Shown: in pieces, positions 56,828 through 57,625 of the stretch
Numbering within the stretch: the first letter of the stretch is position 1
Layout: each line of letters starts with the position of its first letter
Assembly: GCA_977030845.1 (NCBI GenBank)
Contig: OZ365113.1
Coordinates: 13,888,001 to 13,952,000, forward strand
Origin: Fimbriosthenelais zetlandica
Taxonomy: Eukaryota
DNA length: 64,000 nucleotides
Reading direction: 5' to 3'
Position numbers and translations under genes: made by a program
The notes under the pieces: model-generated
Databases searched by the model: none
Seen by the model: the letters and a program-made list of their open reading frames with translations, nothing else
What the model was told of the DNA's origin: nothing

Positions 56828-56979
56828 TGTGCAGTGTCATTGTCATACTTTCGTGGACGGCCGCGCGTCAAATGTCTCCGCCTTACAAACTCTAAGTCAT
56901 CCACCATCCAAAACGATCCAAAATCATCCTCATACCTCACAAAACATTTATGTAGGGACAAATTGGTGCGTATAGCATT
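56828..56979 (-). CDS. FoxP: FoxP forkhead second-half exon B (alternative NAIRT type), phase 0/2
   Basis: 152 nt after a long polypyrimidine tract ending CGCACAG, donor GTAAGG; translates [50 protein letters not shown](Q), the motif type of the insect alternative FoxP exon and vertebrate FOXP1 exon 18b. Confidence 0.95.
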
Positions 56980-57503
56980 CTGTGCGAGTGAGAGAAAGAG
57001 GGAGAGAAAAAAGAAGGGAATAAAAAATAGATCCAAAAACCAGAGTCGAGGCAGCACAGGTACAGTGGTACAATATGTAGAGTTGTGAAGAAGAAAAAAC
57101 CCACCACTCCAAACAGAAATAAGACTTCATTATTTCTCTTCATTTCCAGCAACAGCATTCATTTCTTTACGTCTTAGCTTAATTCATTTGAAGCTCATAA
57201 CTAAAATAGGGAGGCCTTGGAAACAAAGCAAATCCATATGAAAAAGTCCCCATCTATCAAACCATTGTTTTCCGATTGTCTCAGTCTCAAATATGAATCC
57301 CAAAGTGCAATAGAAAACAAGAAGAATGAAGCCGAGTCTGAAGAAGGAGTGGTGGAGGATGTTATAAGTAGACATGTATGTAAAAGACGAGAGGTCACAC
57401 ATCGGCAGGAGGAAGTGGTGGTCGAGTGGGTCACACCAGGGTTCTTTGCTTGCTTGTTTGTGTTTGTTAAATATTTTTGTTTGTTTGGAGGACAACAACA
57501 TAC

Positions 57504-57625
57504 CCGCTCATCTTCTGTGGTCTGCGTTTGTAGAATTCTATCTCGTCCACAGTCCACACGGCCCCCTTAACGTTCTCTACTCGCATAAAACATTTGTGAA
57601 GACTAAGGTTGTGACGCACCGCGTT
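57504..57625 (-). CDS. FoxP: FoxP forkhead second-half exon A (canonical NAVRH type), phase 0/2
   Basis: 122 nt, acceptor GGTTAG, donor GTATGT; translates [40 protein letters not shown](G). Confidence 0.97.

What the first reader, a model, noticed from the sequence alone, without database searches (positions are those of the whole stretch)
56828..57625. Mutually exclusive recognition-helix exons of FoxP (NAVRH versus NAIRT), both intact
Seen: two paralogous exons, both starting in phase 0 and ending in phase 2 (122 and 152 nt, both 3n+2). Including both or neither shifts the frame, the classic signature of a mutually exclusive pair. Established: an equivalent switch exists in insect FoxP and in vertebrate FOXP1 (exon 18 vs 18b), where it changes DNA-binding preference and is tied to pluripotency. 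Inference: this animal retains the same switch, supporting a deeply ancestral splicing-controlled specificity change that may mark stem or germline versus neuronal states.
Basis: partly seen in the sequence, partly recalled or inferred. Interest (0 to 1): 0.78.

Follow-up and report, generated by a model that had tools for sequence, protein, structure and literature searches.

The report
Ancient FoxP alternative forkhead exon pair
This animal's FoxP gene carries the two alternative exons for the DNA-reading helix that are already known from flies to humans, so the pair itself is ordinary, but in this lineage the end of the second exon is matched by a conserved stretch in the following intron that could pair with it and help decide when that exon is used.

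Summary
On the minus strand, exon A (57625-57504, 122 nt, NAVRH) and exon B (56979-56828, 152 nt, NAIRT) have AG/GT sites. They lie between the first forkhead exon (ends 60379, phase 0) and the next exon (starts 54805). Either exon alone keeps the frame; both or neither give early stops.

They are orthologues of the bilaterian FoxP 7A/7B pair (FOXP1 18/18b):
- An exon-level tree splits A from B at 100/100.
- B is identical over 44 residues to a chiton B isoform.
- B is under purifying selection (pN 0.04-0.07 against pS 0.64-0.78).

This is already published. Santos et al. 2011 dated the pair to the base of Bilateria and predicted it in Annelida. The stem/germline idea is unsupported, because fly isoform B is neuronal. 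No RNA run of this species was listed, so use of the exons here is untested.

One result is new:
- The last 19 nt of exon B are invariant in four relatives.
- They are complementary (17 of 18) to the only conserved intronic word, 0.5-1.1 kb downstream.
- The predicted stem is -25 to -30 kcal/mol and appears in both the MFE and centroid folds.
- One pair shows a compensatory change.

The stem probably gates B's 5' splice site, or it is an ADAR substrate. It was not found in a nemertean, an ant or one other lineage.

The parts
60379..60480 (-). [quoted passage not shown] It ends in phase 0.
   Evidence: (Pfam Forkhead positions 14-48, E 4.9e-9).
57504..57625 (-). Exon A, 122 nt (3n+2). It encodes the canonical FoxP recognition helix NAVRH (His codon at 57613-57611) plus the wing.
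56828..56979 (-). Exon B, 152 nt (3n+2). It encodes the alternative recognition helix NAIRT (Thr codon at 56967-56965), [13 protein letters not shown], and a longer basic tail.
56848..56865 (-). Codons for RGRPRK. This is an AT-hook-like core found only in exon B and nearly invariant in B exons from vertebrates to insects.
   Evidence: Pfam AT_hook E 0.021, 15.1 bits, below the 17.4 cut-off; motif in nearly all B-type hits.
56828..56846 (-). Exon-B tail (ATGACAATGACACTGCACA), the exonic arm of the predicted long-range stem. It abuts the 5' splice site.
   Evidence: a 19-nt invariant run in four relatives, against a maximum of 8 elsewhere in the exon.
55811..55836 (-). Conserved intronic box (TCTTATTTTGTGCAGTGTTATTTTCA), the intronic arm of the stem. 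It lies 999 nt downstream of the exon B donor.
   Evidence: the only intronic word of 12 nt or more shared by the window, L010 and L012; unique in the genome.
56591..56620 (-). Degenerate second copy of the box (70% identical to the reference). Its significance is uncertain.
   Evidence: family D3.
54727..54805 (-). Next constitutive exon, 79 nt. Its first base completes the split codon, then it reads NLQLKNSASVHQSSSFYGESLNASLR.
54285..54455 (-). Following coding exon (AALAESNLPML...EPEDLSK), ending at the stop codon 54287-54285. A possible alternative donor overlaps the stop.

Best explanation
The two exons are this animal's copies of the ancient bilaterian FoxP alternative exons: 7A/7B in the Santos nomenclature, 18/18b in human FOXP1. 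Each encodes recognition helix 3 and the wing of the forkhead domain. One or the other is spliced between the exon ending at 60379 and the exon starting at 54805. Exclusivity is enforced at least by reading frame. Both exons are 3n+2, so A+B or neither gives a premature stop upstream of further junctions, and such transcripts would be non-productive.

Isoform A is the canonical FoxP DNA reader. Isoform B replaces the base-contacting His with Thr, changes the beta-strand and wing residues, and adds an RGRPRK minor-groove-type motif. It is therefore expected to read different sites, by inference from FOXP1-ES binding data and the Drosophila structural model.

In this lineage the last 18-19 nt of exon B, next to its 5' splice site, can pair with a conserved box about 1 kb into the downstream intron. 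The most likely role of this stem is to control access to exon B's 5' splice site and so bias the A/B choice.

Shown: the exon anatomy, orthology, purifying selection, and conservation and complementarity of the two arms. Inferred: actual alternative use in this species, the change in DNA specificity, formation of the stem, and its effect on splicing.
For: Anatomy and frame.

Forkhead and FoxP identity.

Orthology:
- The A/B split has 100/100 support, with the cnidarian Clytia single form on the A side.
- The window's B is identical over 44 residues to the Liolophura B isoform.
- The same A-then-B order and exon sizes (122 and 152 nt) occur in the nemertean Tubulanus.

Selection:
- Exon B pN is 0.044-0.072 against pS 0.64-0.78 versus two relatives. 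Exon A is similar.
- Exon B length varies (152, 155, 224, 248, 317, 176 nt) but is always 3n+2, while exon A is always 122 nt.

Literature: PMC3002244; PMC11701043; PMC7776582.

Stem:
- 17 of 18 positions pair, counting one G-U.
- The duplex is -27.0 kcal/mol with 0 of 300 shuffles as good. L010 gives -25.4 (2 of 200) and L012 gives -25.5 (0 of 200).
- In all four relatives the box's best partner across the whole forkhead region is the exon-B tail.
- The box is the only intronic word of 12 nt or more shared by three relatives over 5.6-12.5 kb.
- The tail is a 19-nt invariant run, P about 0.003.
- L005 shows a U-A to A-U compensatory change and a re-paired distal segment.
- The stem is present in the MFE and centroid folds of the 1061-nt pre-mRNA segment.
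- The box is unique in the genome and matches no Rfam family.
Against: - No RNA evidence from this species. No RNA run was listed, and the contigs that could be laid come from relatives.
- In one relative's contig, exon A is joined to the upstream exon while the A-B intron is retained. No exon B junction was seen.
- The stem rests on four related sequences. Three have identical arms, so there is only one truly compensatory pair.
- In L012 and L008 the donor lies 69-93 nt beyond the tail, so the 5' splice site is not inside the stem there.
- No equivalent complement was found in Tubulanus, L013 or the ant Cyphomyrmex.
- No second selector near exon A was found.
Confidence: 0.75

Rival explanations
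1. Exon B is conserved sequence that is no longer spliced in this species, a silent relic, and only isoform A is made.
For: No transcript evidence for exon B in this species. The same gene already holds a decayed twin of the first forkhead exon.
Against: Exon B is fully open, with a strong polypyrimidine tract, a CAG acceptor and a GTAAG donor. Its pN is 0.044-0.072 against saturated pS. It is 44/44 identical to an annotated chiton isoform. The 3n+2 length is kept in every lineage despite length changes. A relic would have decayed as the twin exon did.
Confidence: 0.05
2. The tail-box duplex is chiefly an ADAR substrate, an exonic editing site paired with an intronic complementary sequence. 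It would recode the linker after the forkhead domain rather than control splicing. The last A of the tail is the second base of a CAG, CAT or CAA codon in the different relatives, so editing there would give Arg in all of them. In this species it would also turn the -1 base of the donor into a G-like base.
For: An exon-intron duplex with loss of synonymous variation is the classic signature of conserved editing sites (general knowledge). The tail stays invariant in L012 and L008, where the donor has moved 69-93 nt away, so the constraint does not depend on the splice site being adjacent.
Against: No RNA-DNA differences could be examined. The one possibly RNA-derived contig covering the tail (X20, a relative) shows no change at 56828-56845, although contigs hide partial editing. 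The candidate A sits at the end of the helix, not inside it.
Confidence: 0.2
3. The complementarity is coincidental. The tail would be conserved as a splicing enhancer or for protein reasons, and the box would be an unrelated protein-binding site.
For: Three of the four sequences have identical arms. Strict contiguous Watson-Crick words are only 10 nt long and not significant alone. A similar-looking hit in one insect group was not reproduced in an ant.
Against: The single conserved intronic word is the reverse complement of the single ultra-conserved exonic stretch. Energy-based tests reached the observed value in 0/300, 2/200 and 0/200 shuffles. L005 keeps pairing through changes on both sides.
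Confidence: 0.15
4. The pair is not strictly exclusive. A+B or double-skipped transcripts are made in quantity as regulated unproductive splicing that tunes FoxP dosage.
For: The 524-nt A-B intron poses no steric barrier in this species. No competing selector for exon A was found. Drosophila makes a third, intron-retaining isoform. A relative's contig retains the A-B intron.
Against: Nothing was tested directly. Frame conservation argues only that the productive forms are A or B.
Confidence: 0.2

Closest known systems
Bilaterian FoxP alternative forkhead exons 7A/7B (Santos et al. 2011, PMC3002244), including Drosophila FoxP isoforms A and B
   Same: Same position in the forkhead domain and same A-then-B order. 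Same diagnostic residues: His to Thr in helix 3, Val to Ile, [15 protein letters not shown]. The pair was already predicted in silico for Annelida and Mollusca.
   Different: In Drosophila, exons 7 and 8 are alternative last exons. Here both are internal and share a downstream exon, so the frame rule (both 3n+2) applies. This species was not among those listed, as far as could be read; the supplementary table is not held.
Human and mouse FOXP1 exon 18/18b (16/16b), the FOXP1-ES isoform (Gabut et al. 2011, as reviewed in PMC11701043)
   Same: An orthologous B exon ([13 protein letters not shown]...RGRPRKY) clusters with the window's B in the exon tree. It is an internal, frame-preserving swap that changes the preferred DNA motif.
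   Different: Vertebrate B also changes the first Asn to Gly and has VEDEFGSFWTVDD. Its known biology (pluripotency, MBNL repression) is not shown to apply here.
Mutually exclusive exon clusters controlled by long-range RNA pairing (Dscam1, 14-3-3xi, srp, human ATE1; PMC4691838, PMC7797038)
   Same: A conserved long-range complementary pair sits next to an alternative exon within a tandem-duplicated exon pair.
   Different: Those systems use one docking site competing for two or more intronic selectors. Here only one pairing was found, and one arm is exonic and abuts the 5' splice site. None of the retrieved papers on RNA pairing mentions FoxP.
Exon / intronic editing-complementary-sequence duplexes of ADAR targets (for example the GRIA2 R/G site at an exon's 3' end)
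   Same: The exon's 3' end pairs with the downstream intron, and synonymous sites are frozen.
   Different: No editing has been observed here. The arms lie 0.5-1.1 kb apart rather than forming a local hairpin.

Membership tests
FoxP subfamily forkhead domain | Forkhead (winged-helix) domain, with the second half encoded by each exon | tested here: met
   Pfam PF00250: exon A E 1.2e-7 (32.2 bits, above the cut-off of 27). Exon B E 2.9e-4 (21.3 bits, below the cut-off for this 50-residue fragment alone). Upstream exon E 4.9e-9. FOXP3, P2, P4 and P1 are the best solved-structure matches, at E 4e-10 to 5e-8.
Bilaterian FoxP A/B alternative exon pair | Two tandem paralogous exons for helix 3 plus wing, with A upstream of B, in a single FoxP gene | tested here: met
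   (single locus in the genome). Searches show the same order in six other loci, including Tubulanus and Cyphomyrmex.
Bilaterian FoxP A/B alternative exon pair | A-type has NAVRH with [14 protein letters not shown]-type has NAIRT with [13 protein letters not shown] and RGRPRK. Each groups with its own type across phyla. | tested here: met
   (motifs). (ML tree: A and B each form one side of a 100/100 branch, with the cnidarian on the A side).
Bilaterian FoxP A/B alternative exon pair | Both isoforms are actually produced by alternative splicing | not testable with these tools
   No RNA run of this species was listed. The contigs laid were relatives' DNA or partly spliced RNA without a B junction.
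Mutually exclusive exons enforced by reading frame | Including both exons or neither shifts the frame and creates a premature stop | tested here: met
   A+B stops at residue 89 of the test construct and skipping both stops at residue 41. Exon B is 3n+2 in every lineage examined.
Mutually exclusive exons by steric hindrance | The intron between the two exons is too short to be spliced | tested here: not met
   The A-B intron is 524 nt here. It is only 77 nt in the closest relative, L010, where this mechanism could apply.
Docking-site / selector competing RNA structures | One docking site that can pair alternatively with a selector next to each variable exon | tested here: not met
   The box pairs best with the exon-B tail in all four relatives. 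The next-best partners (-17 to -24 kcal/mol) are not conserved and are not positioned at exon A.
Conserved long-range RNA duplex at an alternative exon | Both arms conserved beyond background, complementary, with covariation | tested here: inconclusive
   Conservation and complementarity are strong. Only one compensatory pair was found (window U-A versus L005 A-U), from five sequences of one lineage. The duplex is absent in three other lineages.
AT-hook | A GRP core flanked by basic residues that reaches the Pfam AT_hook threshold | tested here: inconclusive
   RGRPRK scores 15.1 bits against a cut-off of 17.4 (E 0.021). The motif is nearly invariant in B exons.
ADAR editing site with intronic complementary sequence | A-to-G differences between RNA and DNA within the duplex | not testable with these tools
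No RNA of this species was served.

The most novel reading that the evidence does not exclude
In this annelid-type lineage the ancient FoxP A/B specificity switch is gated by a conserved long-range RNA stem. The stem forms between the last 18-19 nt of exon B, at its 5' splice site, and a unique intronic box 0.5-1.1 kb downstream. This would be an RNA-structure mechanism for FoxP isoform choice that has not been described. It might work through masking of the splice site, or through ADAR editing that recodes Gln/His to Arg and strengthens the donor.
Probability: 0.45. Interest if true: 0.6.

Novelty: new member of a known kind. Interest (0 to 1): 0.35.

Why it matters
The exon pair itself adds one more species to a pattern published in 2011, so it changes little. 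Its value is as a clean internal example, with both exons sharing flanking exons, in a spiralian.

The tail-box stem is the part worth following. How invertebrates choose between the two FoxP DNA-binding domains is unknown. In mammals the choice is tied to pluripotency and in flies to motor learning. A short, unique, conserved pair of complementary elements gives a concrete handle. Synonymous and compensatory mutations could shift the A/B ratio without touching the protein, which would allow a direct test of what each isoform does. The nearly invariant RGRPRK motif in B exons also suggests that isoform B gains a minor-groove contact. This could help explain the altered binding preference reported for FOXP1-ES.

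Tried and rejected
1. The first run search, with 5.9 kb, listed nothing. A retry with the 798-nt stretch listed 24 runs, none holding more than 16% of the words and none on record as RNA. Laying four of them gave only contigs of relatives:
   - genomic pieces of exon A or exon B with diverged introns;
   - one spliced WK|NAVRH contig from another organism;
   - one contig (X20) with exon A spliced to the upstream exon but the A-B intron retained.
   There is no verdict on exon B use.
2. Intron alignment of the window against L005 shows no alignable intron sequence apart from the splice sites.
3. Other inverted repeats in 54600-60500 are no stronger than chance would give, and none is conserved.
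4. A search for the same stem elsewhere found nothing in Tubulanus, L013 or the ant Cyphomyrmex within 6 kb.
5. An insect group (L022, L025, L026; introns 96% identical, so one lineage) has a -31.5 kcal/mol complement 2.1-2.6 kb downstream. It is not shared with the ant, so I treat it as inconclusive.
6. The metagenome scan for more annelid-type relatives returned mostly arthropod-type loci.
7. Several contigs of close relatives could not be fetched because the files are too large. Two named mollusc proteins are not on record.
8. An Rfam scan gave only a sub-threshold snoRNA-like hit on the opposite strand.
9. The supplementary table of Santos et al. that lists the annelid species is not held.
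10. I did not verify the phylum myself. 'Annelid' comes from the earlier scan note.

Full report
**What is at the coordinates**

The window has no N. I read the minus strand and translated it. This gives a run of FoxP exons:
- 60480-60379 encodes [34 protein letters not shown] and ends in phase 0 at a GT.
- 57625-57504 (exon A, 122 nt) encodes [40 protein letters not shown] plus two bases.
- 56979-56828 (exon B, 152 nt) encodes [50 protein letters not shown] plus two bases.
- 54805-54727 starts with the base that completes the split codon.
- 54455-54285 runs to a stop codon.

All of these have AG acceptors and GT donors, and exon B has the strongest polypyrimidine tract. Joined in silico, A-only and B-only read through. 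A+B stops 14 codons into B, and skipping both stops 7 codons into the next exon.

**It is not chance**
- Each exon matches Pfam Forkhead positions 49-82, and the upstream exon matches positions 14-48.
- The best solved-structure matches are FOXP3, FOXP2, FOXP4 and FOXP1.
- I searched exon B against 1.84 billion representative proteins. About 115 carry a B-type stretch at 65-100% identity, then there is a sharp drop to A-type proteins at 52-69%.
- The genome (447 Mb) has only this one locus.

**What it is**

An exon-level maximum-likelihood tree used 25 peptides. They came from this window, four unnamed relatives, the nemertean Tubulanus, molluscs, arthropods, a sea urchin, vertebrates and the cnidarian Clytia.
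- The tree puts all A exons on one side and all B exons on the other side of a 100/100 branch. The single cnidarian form falls with A.
- The window's B peptide is identical over 44 residues to the annotated B isoform of the chiton Liolophura.
- In Tubulanus the two exons are also 122 and 152 nt and stand in the same order.
- Against two relatives, exon B has pN 0.044-0.072 with pS 0.64-0.78. That constraint is as tight as for exon A.
- Exon B length differs between lineages (152, 155, 176, 224, 248, 317 nt) but is always 3n+2. Exon A is always 122 nt.

So this is the orthologue of the ancient A/B pair, and it is functional by the test of selection.

**What is already known**

Santos et al. 2011 (PMC3002244) described exactly this pair in Drosophila and mouse FoxP1. 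They dated it to the base of Bilateria by tandem exon duplication. They reported in silico predictions in Arthropoda, Annelida and Mollusca. They also pointed to the His-to-Thr change in the recognition helix.

RefSeq annotates B isoforms in a nemertean, a chiton, an octopus, a snail and very many insects.

FOXP1 exon 18b changes the preferred motif from GTAAACAA to CGATACAA and supports pluripotency (review PMC11701043). In Drosophila isoform B is exclusively neuronal and is the isoform tied to operant learning. There the two exons are alternative last exons (PMC7776582).

The suggestion of a stem or germline versus neuronal meaning has no support.

**Expression in this species**

The first run search listed nothing. 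The second listed 24 runs, each holding at most 16% of the sampled words, and none on record as RNA. My single read-laying run placed only short contigs that differ from the window by 1-12 bases per 100-160:
- Most run into diverged intron sequence, so they are relatives' DNA.
- One metatranscriptome contig shows WK|NAVRH spliced, from a more distant organism.
- One contig (X20) joins the upstream exon to exon A and then reads through a short A-B intron into exon B and beyond. It matches the architecture of locus L010, whose A-B intron is only 77 nt.

No exon B junction was seen, and none could have been seen for this species. Use of the exons here remains inferred.

**A new feature found on the way**

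A repeat scan flagged 18 nt at the 3' end of exon B as complementary to a site 999 nt into the downstream intron (pair I7). I followed this up:
1. The duplex is -27.0 kcal/mol, and 0 of 300 block shuffles of the intron reach this value.
2. I fetched genomic loci of relatives: L005, L010, L012 and L008. Each locus with enough downstream sequence has the same box (TTTTGTGCAGTGTTATT, or TGTGCAGTGTTTT in L005) 490-1080 nt downstream of the tail.
3. The box is the only intronic word of 12 nt or more shared by the window, L010 and L012 across 5.6-12.5 kb. It is also the longest shared intronic word in each pair of them.
4. In all four loci the box's best partner anywhere between the first forkhead exon and the box is the exon-B tail, at -25.6 to -30.4 kcal/mol against -17 to -24 for the runners-up. 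Shuffle tests give 2 of 200 for L010 and 0 of 200 for L012.
5. The tail is a 19-nt invariant run in four species whose other synonymous sites are largely saturated. The longest run elsewhere in the exon is 8 nt, and P is about 0.003.
6. L005 differs on both arms while keeping the pairs: U-A becomes A-U, G-U becomes A-U, and the distal five pairs are rebuilt from different letters.
7. The stem closes both the MFE and the centroid structure of the 1061-nt segment.
8. The box is unique in the genome and matches no Rfam family.

Papers on RNA pairing in mutually exclusive splicing that the library returned do not mention FoxP.

**Limits of the stem claim**
- Three of the sequences have identical arms, so there is one real covariation event.
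- In L012 and L008 exon B is extended, and the donor lies 69-93 nt beyond the tail.
- No counterpart was found in Tubulanus, L013 or an ant.
- One insect group has its own strong complement, but that is a single lineage.
- No competing selector near exon A was found, so this is not a docking/selector system as known from Dscam1 or ATE1.

**How it most likely works**

Frame rules make A-only and B-only the only productive mRNAs. Isoform A reads DNA like canonical FoxP. Isoform B loses the His contact and gains a basic RGRPRK segment, a sub-threshold AT-hook match that is nearly invariant in B exons.

In this lineage the stem would hold exon B's 5' splice site in a helix. This would weaken exon definition of B and favour A unless the helix is opened. 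The main rival is that the helix is an ADAR substrate. The remaining alternatives are listed with odds in the Rival explanations section.

**Verdict**

The finding is real and correctly read, but the pair is already known, so it counts as a new member of a known kind. The conserved exon-intron stem is a modest, testable novelty.

Noticed in passing
L010:7734-8002 and L012:7288-7965; window 59961-60085: Both relatives carry two intact tandem copies of the first forkhead exon (102 nt each). In the window the second copy is decayed, with a stop in VNEIYQWFLII-LYFQQNEAS*. This agrees with the earlier scan note on this window.
   Followed up: partly
L010:9999-10075: In the closest relative the intron between exon A and exon B is only 77 nt, against 524 nt in the window. 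A branch-point-like TTAAC lies 40 nt from the donor, so steric exclusion could operate there but not here.
   Followed up: partly
window 56848-56865 (-): The RGRPRK motif, an AT-hook-like core, is specific to exon B and nearly invariant in B exons from primates to insects. The Santos 2011 text does not mention an AT-hook (0 occurrences).
   Followed up: partly
L012:10196-10419, L008:589-836, L013:10178-10494, L039:10784-10959: Exon B carries lineage-specific Thr/Pro/Ser-rich 3' extensions (224, 248, 317 and 176 nt). All are 3n+2, and most end in CA|GTAAG.
   Followed up: yes
L039:10925-10968 versus L022:4849-4892: In insects the last 35 nt of exon B plus the first 9 nt of the intron are identical between an ant and another insect, although 20 of the preceding 141 nt differ. 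The end of exon B therefore looks constrained at the RNA level there too. A -31.5 kcal/mol complement lies 2.1-2.6 kb downstream in L022, L025 and L026 but not in the ant.
   Followed up: partly
window 59375-59399 (-): A 25-nt stretch is 72% identical to the start of exon B and reads RNAFYTNL then a stop. It lies downstream of the decayed first-half twin. It may be a remnant of a larger duplicated block or a chance match.
   Followed up: no
window 54837-54923 (+): A sub-threshold C/D snoRNA-like match (RF00328, 28.4 bits against a gathering score of 45, E 0.017). It sits in the intron just upstream of the 54805 exon, on the strand opposite to FoxP, and is probably chance.
   Followed up: no
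window 53425-54171 (-) and 54287-54288: A 249-codon open frame rich in Glu and Gln lies just downstream of the FoxP stop. The stop overlaps a good donor (AA|GTGAGT), so a longer alternative C-terminus is possible, as in the 713-residue Tubulanus protein.
   Followed up: no
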